A stretch of DNA of 64,000 nt from Mizuhopecten yessoensis (lineage: Eukaryota): the NCBI RefSeq assembly GCF_002113885.1, contig NW_018406415.1, positions 1,007,735 through 1,071,734 on the forward strand. Direction: 5' to 3'. Of this stretch, positions 17,497-62,458 are shown in pieces (the first letter of the stretch is position 1; every line of letters begins with the position of its first letter). The notes under the pieces are model-generated. The model made no database searches. It was not told the DNA's origin and was given only the letters and a program-made list of their open reading frames with translations. The position numbers and the translations under genes were made by a program.

Positions 17497-20400
17497 TTAT
17501 GATTCAACTAGGAAAGTTTCATCCTCTGGGTTGAAATGGACAAGAGAATGCTCAATCTGTAGATGGTCAATGAGTTGTGTGAGAGAGGGTTTAGGATCCT
17601 GAAGTTTGTTGTGTAGGACAATCAAAGCTTGTTGACTGGTCATCCGCCATTTACTGACCAACACACCCAGGCTGTCCAGGTCATTCTGTATTGAATGAAA
17701 AAAAATACATACTTTTTTTACAAGAATATTTTTTAAAGATAGCTGTATGTGATGGGTAATACAACAAGAGGCCCATTGGCCTTAACGGTCACCTAATATA
17801 TTTATACAGAGAGTTGATTTTTGTTTTAACATGAACAGAAATATTATTCAAAGTAGCAATAAAACCACCTTATTCAATATCTAGCATGCAGATTTAAGAC
17901 TGAAAAGTATTTGAAACTAGCACCTCTGATTCTAAACAAGGAAAATGAAGAAATTGTATTTTAGCACACAGACTCCATTGGGCCCCACCCTACAGCCCTT
18001 GGGGGAAGGGATGGCTCAAAATTTTCAAAGTATCAACTTAGGGTTATAATTCCAATCAAGTTATCAACATGTAATATTCAAAGTATCATTTGCCATTGTT
18101 TAATAAACCATAACAAATTTTGCCCCCCTCCTTCCCCAGGGGTAAATGTGAGACCCTAGGGTCATAAAATTCACAATTTTGGTAAAACACCTAAAAACCC
18201 TTCCATCTATGAAGAGTATTTGATTCTACCATATCTGGTCTTGAGAAGAAAGTTTTGAAATTTCAGTCAATTCAACCCTTTTTTGCCCCAACCATCAGCC
18301 CCGGGGGGTCAGTCAGGGCTGATATGTGCATACCATTAATCTGCTATCCAATACTGATAATGCTAACCCAAATTGAATTACTTCCAATGGCAATTAAACA
18401 AATGTTGGTCCAAAATGTGATTTCCCTATATAAACTATAGTAAAGTTTACCCCCTCCCCAGGGTCATGAAATTCACAATTTTGGTAGGGCACCTTAAGAC
18501 CCTTTCATCTATGAAGAGTATTTGATTCTACCATATCTGCATCTTGAGAAGAAGATTTTTGAAATTTTGGCCATTTTTACCCTTTTTGGCCCCGCCCCTC
18601 AGGCCCCTGAGGGCTGGGGACCATATAATTCACAATTTTAGTTGAGCTTTGGCCATGGAAGGTTTCTGCAAAATTTCATTGAAATTGGTTCAGGGGTTTT
18701 GGAGAAAAAGTTGAAAATGTAAATTGTTTACGGATGGACGACGGACGCCGCCGGACAAAAGGCGATCGCATAGGTCACTTGAGACTTTGTCTCAGGTGAC
18801 CTAAAAATATACATAAACATATAAAAAACAAGCTGAAGCCATTGGATACTTTTAGATAACACATAAGTAAATAAAGTCAGCCAAATTTATTGTGCCTACA
18901 AAATTTTACTTTTTAGAAACCATTTAGTTACTGTTTTACGGGGTAAAACCTGATGGTCTGGGTTTTTCAGGTTGGAACAATACCAAAAATATGGACAGCA
19001 ACCTCATAATTTTATTAATTAACAAGTCATTCGGGTGACCTATTGCGATCACTTTTCCATAAACAGTCACATTTTCAACTCAGAAACTGGCAGTCATATG
19101 TTGATGAAACTTAGTGGGAACATCAGCCTGAGGTGCAGATCAGAAACTATACTCAAGATTGGACTGACACCCCCAGGGATCTGAGGGGATGGGGCTAAAA
19201 GGTCACTTAGACTAGTGCAAAAACCTACAGAAGACTTCCTAGATGGGAAACTCATATGTGGATTTTCACCAAGTTTTCATAAAATAATGCTCAGATGTTC
19301 AGGATCAGAATGTATACCCAAGAAGGGGCTGACCCCAAGGTTGGCTCATATGGGGTCGCTTAGTTCAAAACCAGAAACAATCGCTAACAATTACATTTTT
19401 GACTTCTCTGGTTCCAGCATGCAGACTTCAATAAAATTTGGTGATATAAAACCATCAGAATAAATATAAGGTGGGGGATTAAAATGTATACTTCAGATGG
19501 AGGCTGACCCACCAGGAACATGGCCATAAGGGGTGATGAACTTAAACTCAAGAAGGAGCTGACACCCCATGGGAGATAACTAGGGGTCACTTGGTGCAAA
19601 AAATGGAAACAATCATAGTTTTTTACATCTCTTCAAAAAGTCTCTTTTTAATTTCAATAAAACATAACCACAAGGTGGCATACCATATACATCAGTGACA
19701 AATTGACATTATGTGTCATTATTCATCATTGACTGATACTTAATTATGTTTCAACATTATTTCAATGATTAAAAAATTACAGCGTGAACTAGCATTTAAT
19801 TTGCAGAAATCTAATATGTGACCCCATGTCGTGACCTTGACCTTGAGGTTACAGACCTGTGCAATATGAAACACATTTTCTTGTCCAAATACAAATCTCT
19901 GAAGATTCACAACACAATACGAAATCATAAGTTACAGCAGTCGACAAACATTTTAGTAATTTGACAGATTTCATCGTCCAGACAAATGGACAAATTTAAA
20001 GTTGCCACTGTACAATAGTAACATGTATATATCTACCTTGTTTGCTATAAGAAAAAATGCCAACCTGGGTGTCATAAACTTGATTTTAAGGTCTTTTGGC
20101 TCAGATTAACACTATACTTGTGTCGCGATTGATGAAAGATAATCCAATTACCAATAGTTTCAAGCTTAAATTCTCACCTTAGTTCTGTACATTTTGACCA
20201 TGTTTAATTTCCGCAGTTCTTCTTCCTTCTCTGTCAATGTATTTTTCAGTCTATCATATTTTTCCTGAAGCATTTCTGTATCATCAGTAGAAATAGACTT
20301 GGCTCTACTATTTGTCTCTTTTGCAGATGTGATTTGGAATCCAACTTGCTCTGTCGGTTTACAAGCAGCTGAAGAACCCTCGGTATCATTGTCTATATAA

Positions 20401-22242
20401 CTGCTATCAGACATACCAGAGAAATGTAACCTGCTTGGTTTACATGATGACACATTTCTAGACCGGATAGGCGTCCTTTCATATCTTTGTTCAGATATTA
20501 TTTTATGTCCGCTTACATCTTTTGTGATGTTTTTCTGTACAAGATGTGTTGTATCCGGTGTTAACGAACAGAGTTCTACTTGCCTGACTCCCTGCGATTG
20601 TCTTTTATTATAGCTGTTGATCCCATCAGATGCAATTGGGCTAGCTATTATAGAAATTGTTCTACTTATCTCATTACTTGTTGTGTCTCTAGTCTCTGGT
20701 GACAAGCTTGAATCTACAGTAGGTGTTTTAAGAGCATGTTTTCTATAGGTTGCTTTGGAAATATTCACCATGTTTGAACATTCAGATGGAGATGTAAATG
20801 CGCTGATGTTTTCGCTTTTTGCAGAGGTTGTAGAATCAATTTTCAATTTTTCTGACCTCAGTGGTGTAGAACTTGGGCCATAACTTGTTCCCATTGCCTC
20901 ATCAGTAAACCCTGCAGCCAACCTTACTGGAGATAAAAGATTGTCTTGACGATTGTCTCCCTTTGCGTTGGTTTCTGTTGATACAGGTGTTTGTGGTAAG
21001 GTGCTATCTGGGTAATAGATGCGTTTCTTTGTCGGAGGACCAATGGGAGAAGAATGGTAACGCCCACATCTCTTTAGCCTCTCTTTCAGACTGGAACTTA
21101 GCTTCTGTGAATAAAAAAGAATAACTGGTTTATTGTTGCATAGCACATACATCATGCAGACATAAGTTTGCTATATATAGACAAAAGACCTAGATGCATT
21201 ACATATTGATATTAAATGATATATTGCTAGTATACCGTATAATACGTCTCTGCTATAGATGATTGATAATGTTTCATGAGAATATCAACACATAAATGAC
21301 TTCTTTATATATTAGCAGGAATTTGCTAAAAGTCATATTCATACTGAGCTAAATTAACGTGTTTTAACGTAAAAATATTTATTTAAATTATAATTTATTA
21401 ATTTCTTATATTTACAGTTTGAAAATGATAATTAAAATCTTTTCTCAGCTTGAACTGACTATTGGGTAAATATTTTTCCATTACATTTAACTTTGTAGGA
21501 TAGTATATAAGCCCGAGTTTCCTGTGGCCGTAACACCAGACTTGGACATATAGATGTCTAGCTGCTAGTGTTAGGGCCAGAGGAAACTCGGGCTAGATTA
21601 CTTCATGTATTACAATTGTTATTGATTTATATTATTTGTCTCTATAATAACACCTTTGTTAATGTTTGACTTCGGTCAGAAAAATGAACTATACCAGTAG
21701 ACTACAGGGGTTTTAACCCCTGTTAATAGACTGTACATATATATATATGTGAACTGGATTGCCAACTGCTGAACTAGACAAACTTCACAACTGCTTTAGA
21801 CGTGAAACAATAAACAAAAACAACTATCGATACTATTTCTTTAATGTTATGTAACTGCTGAAGTATGGACAGACACGGGGAACTGTCAAATACATAGACC
21901 CAGAAGAAGCAGAATCGTATGTTGCAGTGCCCAGATTGCCCCAACCACAGGTCCCCATTTTTGCCGAAAATGATAAAAATTAAACAAAAGTGCCGAACTG
22001 ACGACCGAAAAGATGAGAACGCTTGTACTTCTACTTCGAACGAAAAAGTCATACAAATAAAGTAGACGCTTTGAGAAATGCAGACTTATCCGTCAAAACG
22101 GGTGATGTTGACCAAACACAATGATGTTGTTTACTGTTATGTGCATCGCATACTGGCACTTAATTACCTAGTTCCAGACCAACCATACATACTTGGGTGC
22201 ACTTCTACCAACCTTTTGTGCCGAGCTAGCACATGAAGACAT
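17497..22242 (-). CDS. SFR1: Swi5-dependent recombination DNA repair protein 1 homolog (SFR1/Mei5), ~381 aa
   Basis: Exons 22242-22213 (tentative), 21104-20178 and 17685-17497, all phase 0. N-terminal LSSSLKERLKR resembles human MSATLRERLRK. C-terminal EKEEELRKLNMVKMYRTK|NDLDSLGVLVSKWRMTSQQAL...LTQLIDHLQIEHSLVHFNPEDETF is the Mei5/SFR1 domain. Confidence 0.88.
17765..18806 (-). mobile_element. HINE of the same family as 12130-13465, inverted, in SFR1 intron 2
   Basis: Reverse complement of the same termini (AACAAGAGGCCCATTGGCCT... and ...GAGACTTTGTCTCAGGTGACC) and a highly similar body. Confidence 0.8.
21510..21594. mobile_element. Small hairpin MITE; partial second copy at 22941-23010
   Basis: TIRs AGCCCGAGTTTCCT.TGGCC.TAACAC / GTGTTAGGGCCAGAGGAAACTCGGGCT. 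Confidence 0.7.
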
Positions 22243-22421: not shown

Positions 22422-22591
22422 GTTTGTAAGATATTTCCCATGAAGGAATCCAAGTTATTCTTTAACTTTGTTGCGTATCTTGTATACAAGATTCCTACAT
22501 CAGTCATTTCAAATACTGCTAATACAGTCGTCAGCAACAGATGAAGCGTATACAGACTAGGGTCTACAGAACCCATTTTCGTTGTAGCTGG

Positions 22592-22715
22592 CACAGGGGC
22601 ATGGATGGCTTTACTTGTAATATTTAAAAAAAAGGGTCTCCTATACTAATATGTATATATTAGTATAGGAGACCCTTTTTTTAATATTACAAGTAAAGCG
22701 ATCCATGCCCCTGTG
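22592..22715. mobile_element. Fold-back MITE with 8-bp TSD (hAT/P-like)
   Basis: Near-perfect 124-bp palindrome CACAGGGGCATGGAT...ATCCATGCCCCTGTG with TSD GTAGCTGG at 22584-22591 and 22716-22723. Confidence 0.85.
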
Positions 22716-23131
22716 GTAGCTGGCATTTTATATTGATCTGGTAAGACCCCCAACCCCTCCAAAAAGAGAAGAAAACATGTATGTTACAGGTAACATGAAT
22801 GACAAAAAAATAGGGTAGATAGTCCGCATTTTTTAAAAACTTTTTTTATGGTTTGGGGCTTATTTGAGAAATTACATAAATCACCAAGCATACATTTTTT
22901 AGTTCATTAAAATAATAATATTGGATTGTTAAGATCGGAGTAGCCCGAGTTTCCTCTGGCCCTGACACGTACCAGACTTTAAAGACATTTTGACAGATAG
23001 ATGTCTGGTTAATCATATACATCTCTTTGAAATCGAGTGCCTCTTATTTAAATACAAATGTTTAATTATATTTCAAATATAAATTTATGTAATTATACAA
23101 GAAATAGACTATCCCCAATATTTTGTGAAAG

Positions 23132-23591
23132 TGTAACATGCGGGCGATCACCAATCCAACTACTGACCATGCTCCACGTTGCTGAACTAGTGAGAGGGTC
23201 CTTGGGTTATACTGAAGCAAAAAGCTTACCCGGGGACCCACTCACTAGGTTATTAACGCTGAGCATGATCAGTTGTTGGATGGGTTACCACCTGCACGTT
23301 ACATTTGGTGGCAGCGGTGGGATTCTGTGTGATCATGTAAGGCCAGTTCCCGGTGGTTAGGGAATGTGCATTGATACACAGGGAGCACTTGCGGGATTCC
23401 CCAGACCAAGTCTCTGGACGAGACTTCTCGGAGGGGGGGAATATTGTAAAAGCTTACATATATAAGGGGTAAAAATACTGCCTTACTGGCAAGTTAGCTT
23501 TTCCAGTGATGCCCTATATTACCCAAGGACCTGCTCACTAGTTCAGCAACATCTAGCGTGGTCAGTAGTTGGATGGGTGATCACTGTTACA
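23132..23591. mobile_element. 460-bp TGT...ACA element with 5S rRNA-derived TIRs and 4-bp TSD
   Basis: TGTAAC...GTTACA ends, TSD AAAG (23128-23131, 23592-23595), and ~75-bp imperfect TIRs containing 5S internal control region-like sequence. Confidence 0.8.
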
Positions 23592-23847
23592 AAAGCTAGG
23601 CCACATTGAGTGGACAGTCTCTGGACTTTAGCATCAGGTTAATACTTTTAATGAGTAATGAATTGTATAAAGATGCATTACAAATGGAAATACATGTCAA
23701 TATTACTTGAAAATACAGAAAAACAGCAGGAACCTTTCTGTGATATTGACCATACACAATGTACCTCCATTGTTTCAGATTTGCAGCTGAGATTCAGATA
23801 TTTATGTGATCTTTTGTAAAAGCAAGATTGCATGTTTGCCTGGAAGT

Positions 23848-26800
23848 ATGGCTCCGGTTGTATCTCTTGTCCAGGGAGCTAGTCGAGGAATAGGGCTTCA
23901 GTTTTGTAAGACCATACTTCAGCGTCACCCAAGCAGTGTTGTCATAGCAACATGTCGTCAACCAAACAATTCCTCAGGACTTCAGGAACTGAAAGCCCAG
24001 AATCCAGACAGATTAGATCTGTGTGTGCTAGATGTCACCAAAGATGAACAAATCGAAAATGTGGCAAAGTTCACCAAAGAAAAATATGGAATGTTAGACT
24101 TGCTCATCAACAATGCTGGGATGCTTCATACTTCTGGTAAAGGGGAAACAAGTTTAAGGGACGTCTCCCGGAAGGTAATTATATATTCCACCACAGATAT
24201 CGATACTACCATTGGTTTAATTTGCGCTTCGTCAGTCCTCACACAGTCAGAATGTATCCCTCTGTATAGGACATTATCTTATTATCAGATCTAGAGTGAG
24301 TGGCTATTTAGACATGTTGTCAAGTCTGAATAAATATGATAAACTGAATTGTGTTGAAAGTAATATATTATGAATATCGTGTACTGTAATGCCCCTTATG
24401 AATTATTTGGAAAATTCCTAAATAAATGGCTTTCATATGGTTTTTTACGTCTGTACATGTAGAAATAAAACTAACTTCATTGATCCTTTTTTTTGTAGAA
24501 AGTAGAAATAAAACTAACTTCATTGATCCTTTTTGTTGTAGAAATTTAATATTTAAAAAAAACCACGTCAGCTACCCGGAGACAAGTAAAAAAAATATAT
24601 GTATAAATCATAGTAGTAACATCACAATCATGATCAGTGTTCTCATTAACTTGGAACCAGCTATTTTTTCACAATGTGTATAGGTCAACTTATAGCATGT
24701 GAACAACATTCAACCACCTGTTTCAAAAGTTAGTTTGATAAATTTTGTACTGAAGCAGAATTGTATCTACTTGAAATGCCTTGAAACAGACTGTATCACA
24801 AATTTCTGAGTTAACAAAATCATCTGTAGCTATAGTAAATCCTGCAGGTACTATATATATATTGATATTGTACAATGTTATTTTAAAATAAAAATTGCTT
24901 TTAATCCCTAGAGAAATTGTTTTCATAACAGTACATGTAAAGTAATTATTATATTCAGGGTCTCCTGGAAACCTTTGATGCAAATACCGTTGGGCCACTA
25001 TTGATGGCAAAAAGTTTTGGCCCACTCCTCAAATCTGGGACAGGTTATTTTGGAATGAAGTCAGCCGATTCTAAGAAGCAGCACGCCTCAATTCTAGTCA
25101 ACATGTCTGCCAAAGTTGGATCCATCACTGACAATCGTAAGTAATTCCACAAAGTTAGAATGTTGGATAACAGACACGACTTATATGTTACATTCATTCG
25201 GTCAACAAGAATCCTTTACCATATTCATGAAACTGTTCTCATGCTCAAGTATGGATTCTGTGCTCAAACCGGCCCCAGCTTTCTTGTAAACCCCTTAAAT
25301 CATGTCAAACAATCAAAAGGTCAAATGTAAACATTGAAAACAGTATTCAGCTTTATTAAAAGTATCTTCAATTTTTTTTCCAAATCATTGACAAAATAGA
25401 GTTTTTATTAATTTATAACCGAAACAAGAAAATTAAAAAAACAATGCTTGAGCATGAGGACTGTTTAATGAATACGGGCCAAGGATTTGTTTTTTAGCCT
25501 GCTACAGGAAAGCTGCAAGAAACCTATCGTATGAGGCGACTAATTTGAGATGCCCTGGAAAATCTGAGGCTTTCTTCTGTTTACTTTGATTAGGGGAGAT
25601 ATCAGAGAGATCACAATCTGATTATAACTTATCATCAGGTTTTTGTTTCAATTATTTCCAGTCACATGATGAGTATCATGTGTCAACAATTTTTAGCCAC
25701 AGGTTGTACATGACTTGATGTATTAAATATCCAGAAAGTCATAATTTCTGCTTACATTTTATTAGCTCACCTGGCCCGAAGGGCCAAGTGAGCTTATGGC
25801 ATGGTGTGGCGTCTGTCCGGCGTCCGTCCGGCGTCAACTTTTTACTTTAAACAACTTCTTCTGAATAACCAAGAGGCCTACGATGATATTTGGCCAGTAG
25901 CATACTTGGATGAAGGGCCACCAAGTTTGTTCAAATAAATGACCTTGCCTTATATTCAAGGTCACAGGGGTCAAATATGTTAAAATCTTTTAAACAACTT
26001 CTTCTGAATAACCGAGAGGCCTAGGGTGATGATATTTGTTCAGTAACATGCTGGGATGAAGGGCTACCAAGTTTGTTGAAATAAATGACCTTGACTTATA
26101 TTCAAGATTACAGGGGTCAAATATGTTAAAAACATTTAAACAATTTCTTCTGAATAACCAAGAGGCCTAGGGTGATGATAGTTGGCCAGTAACATGCTGG
26201 GATGAATGGCTAACAAGTTTGTTCAAATAAATGACCTTGACCCACTTTCAAGGTCACATGGGTCAAATATGTTAAAACCTTTAAACAACTTTTTCTGAAT
26301 AACCGGATTAACCGAGAGGCCTAGGGTGATGATAGTTGGGCAGTAATATGCTGGGATGAAGGGCTACAAAGTTTGTTCAAATAAATGAACTTGACCCACT
26401 TTCAAGGTCACAGGGGTCAAATATGTTAAAACCTTTAAACAACTTCTTCTGAATAACAATTGGCCTAGGGTGATGATATTTGGCTAGTAGCATGCTGGGA
26501 TGAAGGGCTATAAAGTTTGTTTATATGAATGACCTTCATCTTTTTTCAAGGTCACAGGGTCAAATATGTTCTAAACCTTTAAACAACTTCTTCTGAATAA
26601 CCAAGAGGCCTAGGATAATGCCAGTAACATGCTGGGATGAAGGACTACCAAGTGAATGACCTTCGCCCATCTTCAAGGTCACAGTGGTCAATATATGTTT
26701 AAATGTTTAAGTGATTTGTTCTGTATAACCAAAAGGTCCAGTGTAAATATATTTTTCCAGAAGCATGCTGGGTTGGAAGACTATAAACTCTGTTCAACCT

Positions 26801-37800: not shown

Positions 37801-40800
37801 CTACATGTGTAGCGGTAGAGCATCTGTCTTACAGGCCATGAACTACACATGTATTAGAAGAGCATCTGTCTAAACAGACAGTGAACTACATGTGTAGCGG
37901 TAGAGCATCTGTCGAAACAGGCAGTGAACTACATGTGTAGCGGTAGAGCATCTGTCTAAGAGTTAGAACCCCGGTTTGGCCATGCATTTACCCGCTCCTA
38001 CTACATTTGGTGCCGGACCAACCTTTGTTTCAAGTACTAGGTGAATGCTTGACAAGGGGGAACCCAAACTTGGTTGTAAGTAGTGTTGTCTTCGTACATG
38101 TAGCTCAATTGGTAGAGAGTCCATCTAGAGCTACTTGGAGGGCCCCAGGTTCAAACCCTGGTCTAGCCTTGCATTTTTCAACTCCTACTATACAGGTAGT
38201 AGAACAATGTATGAAAAGACCTAGGCAAGATGTTAGTAAAATATGAGCTTCAGATAGGAATGAATTATCCAACATTACACTGTAAACATAAATACTTCTT
38301 CTCTGCGTTGATTTCATAACTTCAATTACTGTACTCTTTTTATCAATAAGCATTTTATAATTATCTGCCGCCATTTTCTTCCAAATATGAACTTAGTACG
38401 GTAAAATTTGATACGATTCTTCGATTGGAGTTTCAGTATCAATGTTGTGATAACTAATGCTTTGTTAATTTTCACATCATACGTGTAATTATACTTACTC
38501 TATGTGAATACGTATACTGGTAGGGAAAATGAACATTTCCTGAGATGTCTTCATACACAGTGGGAACAATCTTCACAATGTAGTCATGGGTGTGAATGGC
38601 TGTAAAATCAACATTGATTAATTCAACCATAGTCCATCAACACAAACAAAATCCAATTATTTGCCATATTAAGTATCCTGGAACAGCGGATGCTTTAAAA
38701 TTTAGGTTAAGTGGCAAAGATGAAAAAGGTGTTATATACCACACAAAATGACATCATCTTTCACATTTGTCAACAAAGAATCGAAGGTACTGAACATTTG
38801 AACTCAAAAAATGTGTTTCTATGTACCGTTACTTCCTAGTAAGGATTCATGAAAAATATTATGTTCTTTCAAAACTGGAGGTTATCATGTGTGGGAATAA
38901 GAGTACATGTCTTTCTCCTTTGGGGCAAGACATGTTTGGGGGATCTTAACCGAAGGTGGGAAACTCTTCAGATGTCAAACAGGAGGCCTAGGTTTGCGAA
39001 ATGTTTGACAACCTCTACATTTTTCCTAAGGTTGAGATCCTCTTTAAGATCCCAAGTGGAGAAACGACCTTTTCCTTATTCTGTTGGCCCAGTCATATAA
39101 TATACTATGTTGACAATTTTTTCATGATCGCTGTCCGACTGCAATATTGCAGTTTTTCGTAAATATAGTTACCTCCCCTTAACTTCATTTAAGATATCCA
39201 GGTATAGCAATAGCATAACAACCTGAACTCCAGCTTTCAAATCTTGGTTTATGAATGGTGAATATTTACACTCAGAACTGTTGTTGATTATTTGTTGTTT
39301 ATTTCAATTTTCATCATAGTCCTGTCCTGCAAGGCATGTTTTTTTTTTAAGAAATGATTTTTCAAAGTTACAATATATTCCATTCCAGAAAAATCTGTTT
39401 TCAATCTGTACTTACAATTTTTTGTCAGTAGAACAGGAATCTTTAATGCATATTTAATGTGACATCATATTACATTTTTTTTTATGACAGGAAAAATCCC
39501 CTTGTCTCAACCTAATTAGGGTAAGGGAAATATATTTCTGGTAAAAGTGAAGATACACCTGTCAGGTTTCAGAAAAGGATTTATTAGACATGGACTTCAC
39601 ACACAGTACATGTGTATTCTGCATAGTAAGTCATCTATGCGTGTGCTTGGTAAATTACTCACCGTTGGCTTCTCGTCTGTCAACATCTTCTAGAGGGTTA
39701 AAAGAACCCCTCACAGCCTGTCAAAGAAACAAAAACAAAAATAGAATAGAAATTGAATATGTTTATACAAATGGGAAGTGATATTAAGCGAAATCTACTG
39801 TAGAACTGAAATAAATCGTTTTCATTTTTTTATGAAAAAAAATCTGCCAACCACATTAATCTCAATTAAAAAAAAATCTGCACATCCTTTTTTACTATTT
39901 TTCTAATCATCAATGCCTATTTGAGTAAGTCTTTTGAATGTCATCGGCCCAAGAAATACCAAAGATCTTTTTACTTATATTTATATGTAAATTGGTTCTC
40001 CTTTATGGAGAGAATCTGTATTTCCCATTCTCTTGAAGGCGGCCATGGTAATTTTTATCAATGATCAAGGACACAAAAAACGATCAAAGTCGTGTGACTT
40101 TTTAATATTTTCACGATGAACCCCATATAGCTACATACAACTGGCTGACAAGTAACAATTGACTGAAATCTCCTGCCATCAAGTCACTTCACCCTTACTA
40201 TGCTCAACCAACAAATGTGTGTCTGGATATTAAAAATTCTACTTGAGACAACTATCTTTTCAAATTTTCAAGATAGGTGAATTACTAGCACCCATGTTTT
40301 GCTACAAGACCTTATATAGGCTCAATTTACATGTGGGTCTAAAACTTTATTCATTTTACAACAATTATGAAACAAGTTCTTTCAACTTATATTAATCAGT
40401 CTTGTTGGCCCGGATGTTAGCGCGCGGGGGGGTCTTAGTGTGGGGGGGGAAACCGGAGAAAACCCACGTGATCGGGCAGGTGACCCTAAACCTTTTCGTG
40501 TCTGATCGGGGAATCGAACCTGTGGGTTACTAGCTATAGGCTAGAGATTTACTTTTTAACTTTGTGACTAGGATGTGTGCGAACCTACCTTGTCCGCCTC
40601 AATGTCAATGTCCATCCCGAATCGGACCTTTTGGATGATGTGTGTCATATCTGGGTTCTGAGGTTGAACTTTGGCTGAATGTGTCGACACATGAAAGTTT
40701 CCAGGAATCTGAATTAGAGTTGAAAAAATTATCAAACTACATTAAAGGAGTGAATATTTTGTGAGTTATACATAATTTTATGAACCTATTTATCCCAGCA

Positions 40801-51109: not shown

Positions 51110-51857
51110 TCATGCATTGGGAATGTTTTTCCGATCGAGAGATGTGTATTTACGGTCTACATTGGTGTTCCAGTGACACACTGCAATAACAGATCGTGTT
51201 TCATATTGTTTGTCACTAAATGAAATCCGTTTATCATGAAAAATGTTCATCACGTTGTTAAAACTTTCAACATAAAATGTGTCTCGTGCAAGGACAAAAT
51301 CATGTGGACTCTTATACAACACATAACTTGTTAGCACTTTGAATAGGAGTTTTATGGCGACTGCATCTGAAAGAATTTGTCTAGATGGTTCATCATTTTT
51401 ATCTTTCCTGCATCTACTCTCAGCATAACACCCCGCGTGATTTCCTTTGTAATGCTCAATGATGTTGAGAAGGTTCCGTTTCAGGATCTCAGGGTTCCCA
51501 TTACAATTTTTCATACACCAGAACGCATGTGTGAGTGTCGTTTCAACTTTGTCCTGAAGAAGAGGTGACCAAGTTTCCCTTTTTGATATAGCGGCCCTGT
51601 TGACACATTGTGCAATGCCTTTTTTCATGTTCTTTGTTGCATGCCAGCTATCGTTTTTGGTTTGTTGAGTGTCCTGTTTCTCTGACATATTTGTTGATTG
51701 CCATGTTTCTGTCGTGTGTGTGTACATTGATGGTGACAACAATTTCATTCATTTCTTCATAAAATTTCACAGTGCCAAAATTTTTCGTGTCGCTGGGATA
51801 CTGGGTCATTTGCTTTTCTAACACAAATTTGCAACAGGTTTTGAGAACACTTTGCAT
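51110..51857 (-). mobile_element. Frameshifted Mutator-like (DDE) transposase remnant
   Basis: Two overlapping frames give HTHDRNMAINKYVRE...NDSWH (DxxH)...THAFWCMKNC...YVESFNNVMNIFHDKRISF...HWNTN, typical of eukaryotic Mutator-like transposases. Confidence 0.65.
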
Positions 51858-61315: not shown

Positions 61316-62458
61316 CTATTTAAAAACCGTATTCAAACCATTATTTTTCAAAAGAATATGACATTTCCAAGCATTCCTTAAATCTGCTGGACGGGAATAC
61401 CCATGAGCCGTAAGGGTATTCCAGAATTGTCGATTCCAATATTCCACCTTCCCCGTATAAAATAATTTGTTGTTTACTGGGACCACACCCATTTTATTGG
61501 CAACAATAGCCAAGAATACGTCATCAAAAACAATATGTTTCGTAAACTGACTTGCAAACATAAAATCCCGAACGAAATTAATTGACATCACTATACTTCC
61601 GGCGCTGACGAATGGTGGGTAAATGTCATACGGGTAATCTGTTGATGATATATACCACTTACTACTTTTAGATCTAAACGGAAACGACCGCGGATTTACC
61701 CATCCCATGTATAGAGATTCATTACTGTTTCCGGTCATCTCTAGTTGCTGTAGTAACAGATCTGTGGCTACGTAATAATCGTCATCAACCAACATGACGT
61801 AATCACATTCTGTACACGAGTTCCCGGCCCAGATTAAAGCACCACGTAACTTCCACGTGTTCATGTAGTAGCTATCCTCGTAGTCTATAAGTAGTATATC
61901 CTTGTGTGTCTTTATTTCTTGTTCAACATCATTATGATACACCTTTGTCCTTCCCAATACAAACACTCGTTTTATCCCGAATACACTCTCCTCATTTGCC
62001 CACGTGTCACGAATAGCTTGTCGAGCTCTTTTGTTTTTTGGTGCTGATTTGATAACAAACAACAATTTTGTACTGTTTGTACACGTCACTTCCGGTTTTG
62101 TGATAAACATATATGGATACACATTGATCATTTTGGGCGTTGTATACTGCGATCCTTCTCGATGATTCCTCACAAATTTCCTCATGTCGATATTCAGTGG
62201 ATATGAAGTATAGTTTGGGTTATTATAAAATGGTATCGCCACTTTCACCTGTTGCTCGATCTGTAGTTCCGATCGCCATCTTGGGTTTTCTAACGAGTAC
62301 AAGGTCGAATTGAACCCTGATAACGCCTCTGCGGCTATACATCCATTTGGCTGAACACTTGGTCCAATATTTAAATAAAACATCGTTAAAATGAGAACAG
62401 ATACAACGGAAAGTAACGACAATGCCATTAGAATTTGCTTCGGAAAACTCATCATCAT
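61316..62458 (-). CDS. GT31 beta-1,3-galactosyltransferase / brainiac-like glycosyltransferase, single coding exon, 380 aa
   Basis: Type II membrane anchor at the N-terminus. GT31 motifs: IKSAPKNKRARQAIRDTW, DYEDSYYMNTWK, VDDDYY (DxD), YPPFVSAGS, FDDVFL. Confidence 0.92.
   Translation of the reverse strand: MMMSFPKQILMALSLLSVVSVLILTMFYLNIGPSVQPNGCIAAEALSGFNSTLYSLENPRWRSELQIEQQVKVAIPFYNNPNYTSYPLNIDMRKFVRNHREGSQYTTPKMINVYPYMFITKPEVTCTNSTKLLFVIKSAPKNKRARQAIRDTWANEESVFGIKRVFVLGRTKVYHNDVEQEIKTHKDILLIDYEDSYYMNTWKLRGALIWAGNSCTECDYVMLVDDDYYVATDLLLQQLEMTGNSNESLYMGWVNPRSFPFRSKSSKWYISSTDYPYDIYPPFVSAGSIVMSINFVRDFMFASQFTKHIVFDDVFLAIVANKMGVVPVNNKLFYTGKVEYWNRQFWNTLTAHGYSRPADLRNAWKCHILLKNNGLNTVFK

What the first reader, a model, noticed from the sequence alone, without database searches (positions are those of the whole stretch)
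23132..23591. Mobile element whose terminal inverted repeats are built from the 5S rRNA Pol III promoter
Seen: TGTAAC...GTTACA ends, an exact 4-bp TSD (AAAG), and ~75-bp imperfect TIRs. Each TIR contains a stretch like AGTTCAGCAACATCTAGCGTGGTCAGTAGTTGGATGGGTGATCAC (23540-23584; inverted at ~23144-23189), and a third, diverged copy lies inside at ~23247-23292. Known: this aligns by eye with the 5S rRNA internal control region (AGCTAAGCAGGGTCGGGCCTGGTTAGTACTTGGATGGGAGACCGC; box A, IE, box C). 5S-derived promoters occur in SINE3 and in plant Cassandra TRIM LTRs, while TGT ends with a 4-bp TSD typify Gypsy LTRs and Ginger DNA transposons. Inference: a non-autonomous Ginger-like or LTR-derived element carrying outward-facing TFIIIA/Pol III promoters at both ends, an architecture I do not recognise from animals. 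It lies under 1 kb from the SFR1/SDR bidirectional promoter and could act as a portable Pol III/TFIIIC module.
Basis: partly seen in the sequence, partly recalled or inferred. Interest (0 to 1): 0.85.

Follow-up and report, generated by a model that had tools for sequence, protein, structure and literature searches.

The report
Rearranged 5S-promoter mini-LTR retroelement in scallop
The supposed inverted-repeat transposon is one old, rearranged copy of a small LTR retroelement family (a TRIM of the Cassandra/Ajax type) whose LTRs carry the promoter part of 5S rRNA; this kind was described in 2024 in ribbon worms and is shown here in a scallop.

Summary
The ends are TGTAAC...GTTACA, an exact AAAG repeat flanks them, the inverted arms are 66-79 nt long, and there are three 5S-like stretches. 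The transposon-with-inverted-repeats reading is wrong.

The locus belongs to a family with about 283 LTRs in this genome. The host is a pectinid scallop, closest to Mizuhopecten yessoensis. Normal copies are LTR (~150 nt), primer site, ~135 nt, purine tract, LTR. They total about 430 bp and have variable 4-bp target duplications, so they are TRIMs.

The primer site pairs 20/20 with host tRNA-Leu(AAG/TAG) plus CCA. LTR positions ~95-140 match 5S rRNA positions ~50-95 (box A, IE, box C). In this match 55 of 61 LTRs beat every shuffle, although Rfam's 5S model finds nothing.

This is the Ajax/Cassandra kind (TRIMp3, Kojima 2024), so far reported only in nemerteans and plants. Here the target duplication is 4 bp rather than 5 bp, the non-5S sequence differs, and a decayed Gypsy-order element shares the LTR end and primer site.

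Only this copy has the inverted left arm, and independent DNA runs confirm it. The arm is an inverted duplicate of the LTR's last 81-98 nt, produced by aberrant reverse transcription or by template switching.

The family is old: the two LTRs of one element are about 81% identical. First readers of this scan noted the same family elsewhere in this genome.

The parts
23128..23131 (.). Left copy of the 4-bp direct repeat AAAG (target-site duplication of the composite)
   Evidence: Other family copies have different perfect 4-bp duplications: ACAC, CTTT, TTTC, GTAT and GTAC.
23132..23229 (-). Inverted arm, the reverse complement of the last part of the LTR. The secure part is 23132-23212 (LTR positions ~68-147). 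23213-23229 is ambiguous: either the arm continues to LTR position 49, or this is the start of the direct 5' LTR.
   Evidence: Most family BLAST hits stop at 23211-23214 and a few run on to 23226-23229. The two readings are set out in notebook entry 4.
23143..23195 (-). 5S-like module of the inverted arm (5S positions ~43-95), facing left and out of the element
   Evidence: 40/53 identical to host 5S L031, z = 12.3.
23226..23303 (+). Remnant of the 5' LTR in direct orientation (LTR positions ~74-147). It holds the diverged third 5S-like module at ~23255-23294 and ends in GTTACA at 23298-23303.
   Evidence: T>A at 23227 in two other individuals.
23306..23325 (+). Primer-binding site TGGTGGCAGCGGTGGGATTC, complementary 20/20 to the 3' end of host tRNA-Leu(AAG/TAG) plus CCA. 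A TT spacer lies at 23304-23305.
   Evidence: There are 25 exact genomic sites of the tRNA 3' 22-mer. In the four loci fetched, ARAGORN calls tRNA-Leu aag or tag genes, and in L047 the 22-mer lies at the gene's 3' end. The human tRNA-Leu-AAG end is quoted in PMC10886601 Fig. S3.
23304..23444 (+). Internal domain of the TRIM with no long ORF. It is 78-91% identical to the internal domains of other copies.
23430..23441 (+). Polypurine tract GGAGGGGGGGAA, 3 nt upstream of the 3' LTR
   Evidence: The same position in other copies reads ...GGGGAATAG|TGTAAC.
23445..23591 (+). Complete 3' LTR (147 nt, TGTAAAAGC...CTGTTACA). It has a private 5-nt deletion near its end. Its 5S-like module lies at ~23540-23580 and faces right.
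23493..23502 (+). GTTAGCTTTT in the 3' LTR, LTR positions 49-58. This is the most conserved LTR stretch. It lies ~47 nt upstream of box A, where a 5S-type promoter would start transcription, and it holds the only T4 run of the sense strand (23499-23502).
   Evidence: Its function is inferred only.
23592..23595 (.). Right copy of the 4-bp direct repeat AAAG
   Evidence: The flank beyond it is not LTR-derived.

Best explanation
Window 23132-23591 is one old, immobile and rearranged copy of a non-autonomous LTR retroelement family. The family is a terminal-repeat retrotransposon in miniature (TRIM) of the 5S-promoter type, TRIMp3, like Ajax and Cassandra. A normal copy has two ~150-nt LTRs that begin TGTAAC and end GTTACA, a primer site for tRNA-Leu, a ~135-nt non-coding core and a purine tract. 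A Gypsy-type integrase inserts it and makes a 4-bp duplication. The last third of each LTR derives from 5S rRNA positions ~40-97 (box A, intermediate element, box C). By analogy with Cassandra, this most likely let RNA polymerase III transcribe the element from inside the LTR; that step is inferred. Reverse transcription primed by tRNA-Leu, using the enzymes of a Gypsy-order partner, then copied the RNA; that step is also inferred. In this copy the start of the 5' LTR is replaced or preceded by an inverted duplicate of the last 81-98 nt of the LTR. The LTR's two end hexamers are reverse complements of each other, so the composite still reads TGTAAC...GTTACA and mimics a transposon with terminal inverted repeats. 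The inverted arm arose in one of two ways: aberrant reverse transcription before integration (fold-back of strong-stop DNA), or template switching at the TGTAAC/GTTACA and TTAC microhomologies after integration. The data do not decide between them.
For: Family structure. A BLAST of the parts against 29 loci gives LTR-internal-LTR in nearly all, and L005 is LTR-int-LTR-int-LTR. Perfect 4-bp duplications that differ between copies were found in five loci.

Copy number. A conserved 30-mer of the LTR has 283 hits with up to 3 mismatches, against 0 for the control. The 20-nt primer site has 112 hits.

Primer site. It pairs 20/20 with host tRNA-Leu genes plus CCA.

5S origin. 55 of 61 LTRs score above all 1220 shuffles (mean 19.8 against 8.1 +/- 1.3). 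The reverse-complement control gives 7.7. The match is always 5S 50-95 to LTR 95-140, at 74-86% identity to three host 5S-type sequences.

Sister subfamilies with the same primer site and 5S-like LTR end exist.

Candidate partner. A decayed element has gag zinc knuckle, RVT_1, and Integrase_H2C2 plus rve, in Gypsy order. Its LTR ends ...CCTGCACGTTACA and it carries the identical 20-nt primer site. Its LTR has 19 genomic hits.

Uniqueness of the inverted arm. No scored copy spans the junction.

Reality of the structure. Contigs of two independent DNA runs span it.

Age. LTR identity within an element is 81% (n = 26), the same as between elements (80.5%). The 77% complementarity of the arms therefore fits arms that were identical when they formed.

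Known kind. Kojima 2024, PMC10886601.
Against: Rfam's 5S model does not recognise any copy, so the 5S origin rests on primary-sequence statistics. Pol III transcription is not shown. The runs laid here are assembled contigs and cannot show RNA starts. The lack of T4 runs in the sense strand (3 against 16.9 expected) comes from copies that share one ancestor, so it amounts to little more than one observation. The genome search scores only 40 candidates per call, so other inverted copies cannot be excluded.
Confidence: 0.85

Rival explanations
1. One reading: a non-autonomous DNA transposon (Ginger-like or similar) that moves as a unit by means of ~75-bp terminal inverted repeats built from the 5S promoter.
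For: TGTAAC/GTTACA ends, the exact AAAG duplication and 66-79-nt inverted arms are present.
Against: Every other family member examined has direct LTRs, a tRNA primer site and a purine tract. No scored copy shares the inverted junction, and a pattern search for head-to-head arms found none, though with low power. The interior of this copy is itself a standard TRIM core with primer site and purine tract.
Confidence: 0.03
2. Aberrant reverse transcription. Minus-strand strong-stop DNA folded back on itself at a 4-nt microhomology (TAAC/TTAC) and copied itself. The product, an inverted R-U5 followed by a direct R-U5 and the primer site, then served in place of plus-strand strong-stop DNA. The finished cDNA was integrated as a unit, because its left end still reads TGTAAC.
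For: This explains four things in one event: the exact LTR terminus at the left edge, the missing U3 on the left, the direct arm ending exactly at the primer site, and the AAAG duplication. Under one reading of the junction, the inner end of the arm maps to LTR position 49. That is position +3 of the 5S frame when box A at 23540 is set to +50. Self-priming of strong-stop DNA is a known side reaction of retroviral reverse transcription (cited in PMC3098202). The arm divergence of 77% equals normal LTR-LTR divergence within an element.
Against: 23213-23229 reads equally well as the start of a direct 5' LTR (12/13 to this element's own 3' LTR start), followed by a deletion of LTR 14-73 between TTAC repeats. 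Under that reading the inverted arm ends at about LTR position 68 and the model loses its support (note). Shared derived bases do not pair the two arms: 3'LTR+inverted 3, 3'LTR+direct 2, inverted+direct 1. No second example was found.
Confidence: 0.22
3. Rearrangement after integration. A normally inserted TRIM suffered replication template switching: out at the TGTAAC/GTTACA hexamers and back at a short microhomology. This inserted an inverted duplicate of an LTR end at the start of the 5' LTR, and a slippage deletion between TTAC repeats accompanied or followed it.
For: The original AAAG duplication is kept without any coincidence. Microhomologies sit at both junctions (TGTAAC 6 nt, TTAC/TAAC 4 nt). 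AAAAGCTTAC at 23220-23229 is identical to the private variant at the start of this element's own 3' LTR, 23448-23457. The inverted arm is closest to the 3' LTR of the same element (88% against 77% and 74%).
Against: It needs two or three separate steps. The three LTR pieces are about equally diverged, so the event would have had to follow insertion closely.
Confidence: 0.4
4. Chance juxtaposition: two independent family insertions, one inverted, lying head to head and trimmed by deletion. A variant has a TRIM nested in an inverted solo LTR.
For: LTR elements often nest. The family has about 280 LTRs.
Against: The identical AAAG on both outer sides would then be a coincidence of about 1 in 256. 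The right flank 23592-23650 shows no LTR similarity beyond chance, since 37 of 200 shuffles reach its mean score, so no remainder of a host LTR is present. The 4 nt before the possible direct LTR start (ATAC) do not match the right flank.
Confidence: 0.1

Closest known systems
Ajax (Ajax-1_NGe, Ajax-1_LiLo), 5S-promoter TRIMs of nemerteans; Kojima 2024, PMC10886601
   Same: Both are TRIMs of about 420-435 bp with LTRs of about 150-160 nt. Only the promoter part of 5S (box A, IE, box C) is present, in sense orientation at the 3' end of the LTR. Both have a purine tract and a primer site assigned to tRNA-Leu-AAG.
   Different: The host is a scallop (Mollusca), not a nemertean. The target duplication is 4 bp, not 5 bp. 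The primer site pairs over 20 nt including CCA, against 6 nt in Ajax. By eye, LTR sequence outside the 5S part and the internal domain show no likeness to the published consensus sequences.
Cassandra, 5S-bearing TRIMs of plants (Kalendar et al. 2008, as cited in PMC10886601 and PMC10946416)
   Same: A 5S-derived Pol III promoter sits in both LTRs of a non-autonomous LTR element. Tandem LTR-int-LTR-int arrays occur (L005).
   Different: Cassandra is a plant element of 565-860 bp. In this report's reading, its LTRs carry a 5S-like unit that folds like 5S RNA. Here only about 55 nt of 5S remain and Rfam's 5S model fails. The origin is almost certainly independent.
SINE3 and other 5S-headed SINEs
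   Same: The 5S internal promoter has been recruited by a non-autonomous retroelement.
   Different: SINE3 elements have no LTRs, primer site or purine tract and are moved by LINEs. This family has all three LTR hallmarks.
Helenus, tRNA-bearing TRIMs of bivalves and other taxa (same paper)
   Same: Same class (TRIMp3), 4-bp duplications in animals, and reported in Mizuhopecten yessoensis.
   Different: Helenus carries a tRNA-derived promoter rather than a 5S-derived one. A Helenus-like element at 37920-38194 of this window shows no obvious likeness to this LTR.
Ginger and other TIR DNA transposons, MITEs
   Same: TGT...ACA ends, a 4-bp duplication and inverted arms in this single copy.
   Different: There is no family of copies with inverted ends and no transposase partner. 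The interior has a tRNA primer site and a purine tract.

Membership tests
TRIM (terminal-repeat retrotransposon in miniature) | Two direct terminal repeats of about 100-250 bp, total length under 1 kb, no coding capacity | tested here: met
   Family copies are LTR ~150, internal ~135, LTR ~150. The window copy has a full 3' LTR and a truncated 5' LTR.
TRIM (terminal-repeat retrotransposon in miniature) | A primer-binding site complementary to a tRNA 3' end just after the 5' LTR, and a purine tract just before the 3' LTR | tested here: met
   The primer site at 23306-23325 pairs 20/20 with host tRNA-Leu plus CCA. The purine tract is at 23430-23441. Both are conserved in other copies.
TRIM (terminal-repeat retrotransposon in miniature) | Copies flanked by short target duplications that differ between loci | tested here: met
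   Perfect 4-bp duplications in L015, L017, L020, L023 and L025, plus 3/4 matches in seven more.
Ajax / TRIMp3 with 5S promoter (Kojima 2024) | LTR contains a partial 5S rRNA sequence covering box A, IE and box C | tested here: met
   5S 50-95 aligns to LTR 95-140. 55 of 61 LTRs score above all shuffles, at 74-86% identity.
Ajax / TRIMp3 with 5S promoter (Kojima 2024) | 5-bp target-site duplication | tested here: not met
   The duplication is 4 bp here. Five-base readings fail in L015, L023 and L025 and in the window.
Ajax / TRIMp3 with 5S promoter (Kojima 2024) | Sequence relatedness to Ajax-1 consensus outside the 5S part (common descent) | not tested
   Compared only by eye with the consensus printed, and no likeness was seen.
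Ajax / TRIMp3 with 5S promoter (Kojima 2024) | Transcription by RNA polymerase III from the LTR | not testable with these tools
   Only assembled contigs were available. According to the paper, this is also unproven for Ajax itself.
5S rRNA gene or pseudogene (Rfam RF00001) | Match to the 5S covariance model | tested here: not met
   No hit at E <= 10 in the window or in 20 family loci. True host 5S-type loci score 47-111 bits.
TIR DNA transposon or MITE (Ginger-like) | Many copies that share the same terminal inverted repeats | tested here: not met
   All hits to the left arm are ordinary LTR ends read on the other strand. None spans the junction.
SINE3 | 5S head, LINE-related body or tail, no LTRs | tested here: not met
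   LTRs, a primer site and a purine tract are present.

The most novel reading that the evidence does not exclude
The copy is a fossil of a self-primed minus-strand strong-stop DNA. The inner end of its inverted arm (23229, equivalent to 23493 in the 3' LTR, LTR position 49) would then record the 5' end of the template RNA. That point lies 47 nt upstream of box A, which is position +3 in 5S numbering, and 6 nt before the only sense-strand T4 run. This would be natural evidence that these animal TRIMs were copied from Pol III transcripts that start and stop within about 10 nt inside the LTR, giving a very short R region.
Probability: 0.2. Interest if true: 0.6.

Novelty: new member of a known kind. 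Interest (0 to 1): 0.35.

Why it matters
This extends 5S-promoter TRIMs from plants (Cassandra) and two nemerteans (Ajax) to a bivalve mollusc. The scallop carries several diverged subfamilies, a clear 20-nt tRNA-Leu primer site and a candidate Gypsy-order partner. That supports the view that LTR elements have captured Pol III promoters repeatedly or anciently in lophotrochozoans. For annotation, these LTRs can pass for 5S fragments or for MITEs. This copy shows how the complementary end hexamers of an LTR let a rearranged copy imitate a TIR transposon. The copy also lies in the 5' region of an SDR gene and is contained in spliced RNA-like contigs of that gene, so it may contribute to the gene's 5' UTR or promoter.

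Tried and rejected
**Rfam.** The 5S model was run at E <= 10 on the window, on the 521-nt locus and on 20 family loci. It found nothing. It returned only hairpin-type miRNA look-alikes, which reflect the palindrome.

**Nested insertion into an inverted solo LTR.** A by-eye match of the right flank (AAAGCTAG...) to the LTR did not hold up. 37 of 200 shuffles reach the observed mean score and 13 of 200 reach the maximum.

**Search for other fold-back copies.** A BLAST of the junction gave none among 40 scored of 216 candidates. A gapped pattern search gave 0 hits, but its power is only about 20% per copy.

**Sister-pair test of the three LTR pieces by shared derived bases.** It did not resolve a pair: 3, 2 and 1.

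**Depletion of T4 runs as a Pol III signature.** The figures are 3 observed against 16.9 expected. I set this aside as weak, because the copies descend from one sequence and a single 290-nt sequence lacks T4 about half the time.

**biv-TRIM (PMC6934838).** This is a different element without a canonical primer site.

**Empty-site allele.** None was seen in two DNA runs, and contigs cannot show absence.

- A Repbase/Dfam lookup, because no tool offers it.

**Consensus.** No consensus of the element was printed, saved or used as a query. Column majorities of the LTR alignment served inside scripts only as an outgroup for counting differences.
Full report
**1. The observation**

- TGTAAC is at 23132-23137 and GTTACA at 23586-23591.
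- AAAG is at 23128-23131 and again at 23592-23595.
- The repeat finder reports an inverted pair 23146-23211 / 23517-23582 (66 nt, 88% complementary).
- It reports a second inverted pair 23129-23207 / 23228-23306 (79 nt, 77%).
- It also reports a direct repeat 23226-23291 / 23519-23584 (74%).

The locus therefore holds three copies of one ~70-80-nt unit: one inverted at the left, one direct next to it, and one direct at the right end. A 21-nt core of the unit occurs three times in the 64-kb window, only here, against 0 expected by chance. Contigs from two unrelated DNA studies cover 22941-23320 without a break. They differ at one base, T>A at 23227. The arrangement is therefore real and present in several individuals.

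**2. What the family is**

A search of the window's own genome (987.6 Mb in 82,659 contigs) with the 460-nt stretch gave 147 matches from 40 scored candidates, out of 530 first-look candidates. The long hits almost all cover query positions 97-449, not 1-460. I laid the separate parts on 29 fetched loci. The usual member has this layout:
- an LTR of about 150 nt
- an internal domain of about 135 nt
- a second LTR of about 150 nt

The total is about 430 bp, and L005 is LTR-int-LTR-int-LTR. LTRs begin TGTAACAGCTAAGG and end ...CCGCCCGCACGTTACA.

Flanks show 4-bp duplications that differ between loci. Perfect ones are ACAC (L015), CTTT (L023), TTTC (L025), GTAT (L020) and GTAC (L017), and seven more loci match at 3 of 4 positions. 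Five-base readings fail.

Directly after the 5' LTR comes TT and then TGGTGGCAGCGGTGGGATTC. This is the exact complement of the last 17 nt of host tRNA-Leu plus CCA.
- The tRNA 3' 22-mer occurs 25 times in the genome.
- In the four loci fetched, ARAGORN calls tRNA-Leu(aag) or tRNA-Leu(tag) genes, and in L047 the 22-mer lies at the gene's 3' end.

Directly before the 3' LTR lies a purine tract, GGAGGGGGGGAA in the window. These are the defining parts of a TRIM, a non-autonomous LTR retrotransposon. They are not the parts of a DNA transposon.

A conserved 30-mer of the LTR has 283 genomic hits at up to 3 mismatches, and its control has none. The primer site has 112 hits at up to 1 mismatch.

Many of the primer-site hits belong to diverged sister subfamilies with the same layout and a recognisable 5S-like LTR end.

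**3. The 5S part**

Rfam's 5S_rRNA model finds nothing in the window or in 20 family loci at E <= 10. It does find true 5S-type loci elsewhere in the genome at 47-111 bits. Direct comparison is nevertheless clear.
- 61 LTR copies scored a mean of 19.8 against the host 5S (L031).
- Shuffled LTRs scored 8.1 +/- 1.3, with a maximum of 15.
- The reverse-complement control scored 7.7.
- 55 of the 61 copies exceeded every one of 1220 shuffles.
- The aligned ranges are constant: 5S 50-95 to LTR 95-140.
- Identity is 74% to L031 over 44 nt, 79% to L034 over 35 nt and 86% to L032 over 22 nt.

By established knowledge of 5S genes, that range holds box A (+50-64), the intermediate element (+67-72) and box C (+80-97). 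Upstream of about 5S position 40 no likeness remains. The LTR therefore carries the promoter part of 5S and not a 5S RNA.

Across diverged subfamilies, the best-kept LTR stretches are these:
- the three boxes
- the LTR end
- a block AAATACTGCCTTACTGGCAAGCTAGCTTTTCCAGTG, which lies where a 5S-type promoter would place the start site

**4. Host and literature**

A single-exon galactosyltransferase ORF of the window is 97% identical to a Mizuhopecten yessoensis protein, over the 63% of the query that this 264-aa protein covers. It is 71-75% identical to proteins of other scallops. The host is therefore a pectinid scallop, most likely that species.

Kojima (2024, PMC10886601) described exactly this kind of element under the name Ajax. 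His description:
- TRIMs of 421-434 bp
- only the 5S promoter part, placed near the 3' end of the LTR
- a primer site assigned to tRNA-Leu-AAG
- 5-bp duplications
- found only in two nemerteans, by routine screening of one genome

He grouped Ajax with Cassandra (plants) and Helenus (tRNA-type; also in scallops) as TRIMp3. A 2024 review lists Ajax for nemerteans only. I found no paper reporting a 5S-type TRIM in molluscs. The bivalve 'biv-TRIM' is a different element without a canonical primer site.

The scallop family shares the design, the position of the 5S part and the primer tRNA with Ajax. It differs in three ways:
- The duplication is 4 bp.
- The primer site pairs over 20 nt rather than 6 nt.
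- By eye, all sequence outside the 5S part differs.

It is a new member of a known kind. Whether it shares descent with Ajax is open.

**5. A candidate partner**

Among the primer-site hits, two loci (L051/L081 and L074/L082) are not TRIMs.
- Downstream of the identical 20-nt primer site lie broken ORFs with a gag zinc knuckle, RVT_1, and Integrase_H2C2 plus rve, in that order. That is Ty3/Gypsy order.
- The ~390-nt LTR begins TGTATACAGACAACTGCTAAGG and ends CCTGCACGTTACA. The TRIM LTR begins TGTAACAGCTAAGG and ends CCCGCACGTTACA.
- This LTR has 19 genomic hits at about 91% identity.

Shared LTR ends and a shared primer site are what a TRIM needs in order to use another element's integrase and reverse transcriptase. 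I therefore take this lineage as the likely helper; this is an inference. Both copies read are decayed, with RT and integrase in separate short frames and no 3' LTR within 9.9 kb. I did not repair or reconstruct anything.

**6. Age**

The two LTRs of one element are 81% identical on average (range 71-87%, n = 26). LTRs of different elements are 80.5% identical. This points to one old burst followed by neutral decay. The Jukes-Cantor distance is 0.216. That corresponds to about 20-110 million years for assumed rates of 5e-9 to 1e-9 per site per year; the rate is an assumption, not a measurement. The family is very probably dead.

**7. Why this copy looks like a TIR element**

The right 60% of the locus is a normal TRIM:

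| Feature | Coordinates |
|---|---|
| End of 5' LTR | 23303 |
| Primer site | 23306-23325 |
| Internal domain | to 23444 |
| Purine tract | 23430-23441 |
| Full 3' LTR | 23445-23591 |

The left part is abnormal.
- 23132-23212 is the reverse complement of LTR positions ~68-147.
- The direct 5' LTR is present only from position ~74 onward (23226-23303).
- The LTR's first and last hexamers are reverse complements of each other, so an inverted LTR end still presents TGTAAC at the outer edge.

No other scored copy spans this junction, and a low-power pattern search found none. The 'TIR architecture' is therefore a property of one copy and not of a mobile family.

**8. How the inverted arm arose**

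The 17 nt at 23213-23229 can be read in two ways, and the evidence does not separate them.

Reading I. The inverted arm continues to LTR position 49. The match is 19/24 identical over 23206-23229 with one 4-nt gap, which is the usual family identity. It meets the direct arm at a 4-nt overlap, TTAC, which is TAAC in the other individuals.

Reading D. The stretch is the start of the direct 5' LTR. It matches this element's own 3' LTR start at 12/13, including the private variant AAAAGCTTAC at 10/10. A deletion of positions 14-73 between TTAC repeats follows.

In this element, LTR 4-13 and LTR 49-58 are themselves inverted repeats, so the 10-mer cannot decide between the readings.

[quoted passage not shown] Self-priming of that DNA is a known side reaction of retroviral reverse transcription (references in PMC3098202). 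The product would be an inverted R-U5, a direct R-U5 and the primer site, and it could stand in for plus-strand strong-stop DNA. That would give exactly the observed order and a left end that integrase accepts. The inner end would then mark the RNA 5' end. It falls at 23493-equivalent, 47 nt before box A (5S frame +3) and 6 nt before the only sense-strand T4 run.

Both readings also fit template switching during DNA replication after a normal insertion: out at the 6-nt hexamer complementarity and back at a 4-nt microhomology.

Several further tests bear on this.
- The three LTR pieces are about equally diverged.
- Shared derived bases give no sister pair: 3, 2 and 1.
- The 77% complementarity of the arms equals ordinary LTR-LTR decay. 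The event therefore happened at or soon after insertion.
- A head-to-head pair of separate insertions needs a 1/256 coincidence of flanks.
- The right flank is not LTR-derived, which removes the nested-insertion variant.

My odds are:

| Explanation | Odds |
|---|---|
| Template switching after integration | about 0.4 |
| Strong-stop fold-back | about 0.2 |
| Two insertions plus deletion | about 0.1 |
| Other | the rest |

**9. Surroundings**

- The + strand ORF 23806-24175 matches short-chain dehydrogenase (adh_short, 7.5e-17) and ends at a canonical donor, AAG|GTAAT, at 24175/24176.
- Contigs from two runs that are probably RNA end exactly at 24175 and continue elsewhere. One of them reaches back to 23331, inside the TRIM. 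The TRIM's core and 3' LTR therefore appear to be part of the 5' end of SDR transcripts. This rests on contigs of runs whose RNA nature is a guess.
- The ORF 20166-21155 (-) has a weak Mei5 (SFR1-family) match, E = 7e-5, below the curated cut-off.

**10. Verdict**

The locus is a rearranged, ancient copy of a scallop TRIM family with a 5S-derived promoter module in its LTRs. That makes it a new member (new phylum, 4-bp duplication, different sequence) of the Ajax/Cassandra kind. First readers of this scan noted the same family on other pieces of this genome, and my tests agree with them. Pol III transcription, the helper relationship and the origin of the inverted arm are inferences.

Noticed in passing
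window 23331-24175; exon 23806-24175 (+): Probable RNA contigs of two runs end at the donor site 24175/24176 of the first SDR (adh_short) exon. One reaches back into the TRIM core and 3' LTR. The retroelement seems to be part of the gene's 5' UTR or promoter region.
   Followed up: partly
window 22590-22717: A near-perfect ~128-nt palindrome that scores against several plant and animal miRNA hairpin models (66 bits to MIR9563, below its cut-off). It has very high contig depth (~6000) in DNA runs, so it is probably a high-copy MITE-like hairpin repeat.
   Followed up: no
window 22911-23011: A short stretch with extreme summed contig depth (20,000-25,000) in two DNA runs, which marks a very abundant repeat just left of the TRIM. 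The 100 nt between it and the TRIM are single-copy.
   Followed up: no
L081 (G000:C13:386500-396400) and L082 (G000:C5106:597000-606900), minus strand: A decayed Gypsy-order LTR retrotransposon (gag zinc knuckle, RVT_1, Integrase_H2C2 plus rve). It has the identical 20-nt tRNA-Leu primer site and the same LTR end (CACGTTACA) as the TRIM, so it is a candidate helper. Two of its LTR hits lie 5.2 kb apart on contig C61.
   Followed up: partly
L052-L080 (primer-site loci): At least a dozen diverged sister TRIM subfamilies share the tRNA-Leu primer site, a related internal domain and a 5S-like LTR end. The 5S-TRIM group in this genome is therefore much larger and older than the one family studied here.
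   Followed up: partly
L032 (G000:C5589:2980715-2980810) and L033 (G000:C2985:626378-626473): Two 96-nt 5S-like units keep 5S positions 1-66 and then switch to an unrelated ~30-nt tail. They may be a truncated 5S variant or the head of a 5S-derived SINE. They lack box C, so they are not the source of the TRIM module.
   Followed up: no
L005 / L022 (G000:C76668:~83950-84700): A tandem array LTR-int-LTR-int-LTR of the family, as described for Cassandra and other TRIMs.
   Followed up: no
L019 (G000:C2271), 5' LTR: A copy whose 5' LTR homology begins abruptly at LTR position ~45, within 4 nt of the putative start site. This is a single case and may be chance.
   Followed up: no
window 23227: T in the reference but A in contigs of two other individuals. 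The A allele makes the junction read AAAAGCTAAC, which is closer to the family sequence under either reading of the junction.
   Followed up: partly
window 51110-51748 (-) and 61316-62458 (-): A weak Mutator-like transposase fragment (E = 0.002), and an intact single-exon beta-1,3-galactosyltransferase (Galactosyl_T, 1.8e-38). The second was used to identify the host.
   Followed up: no
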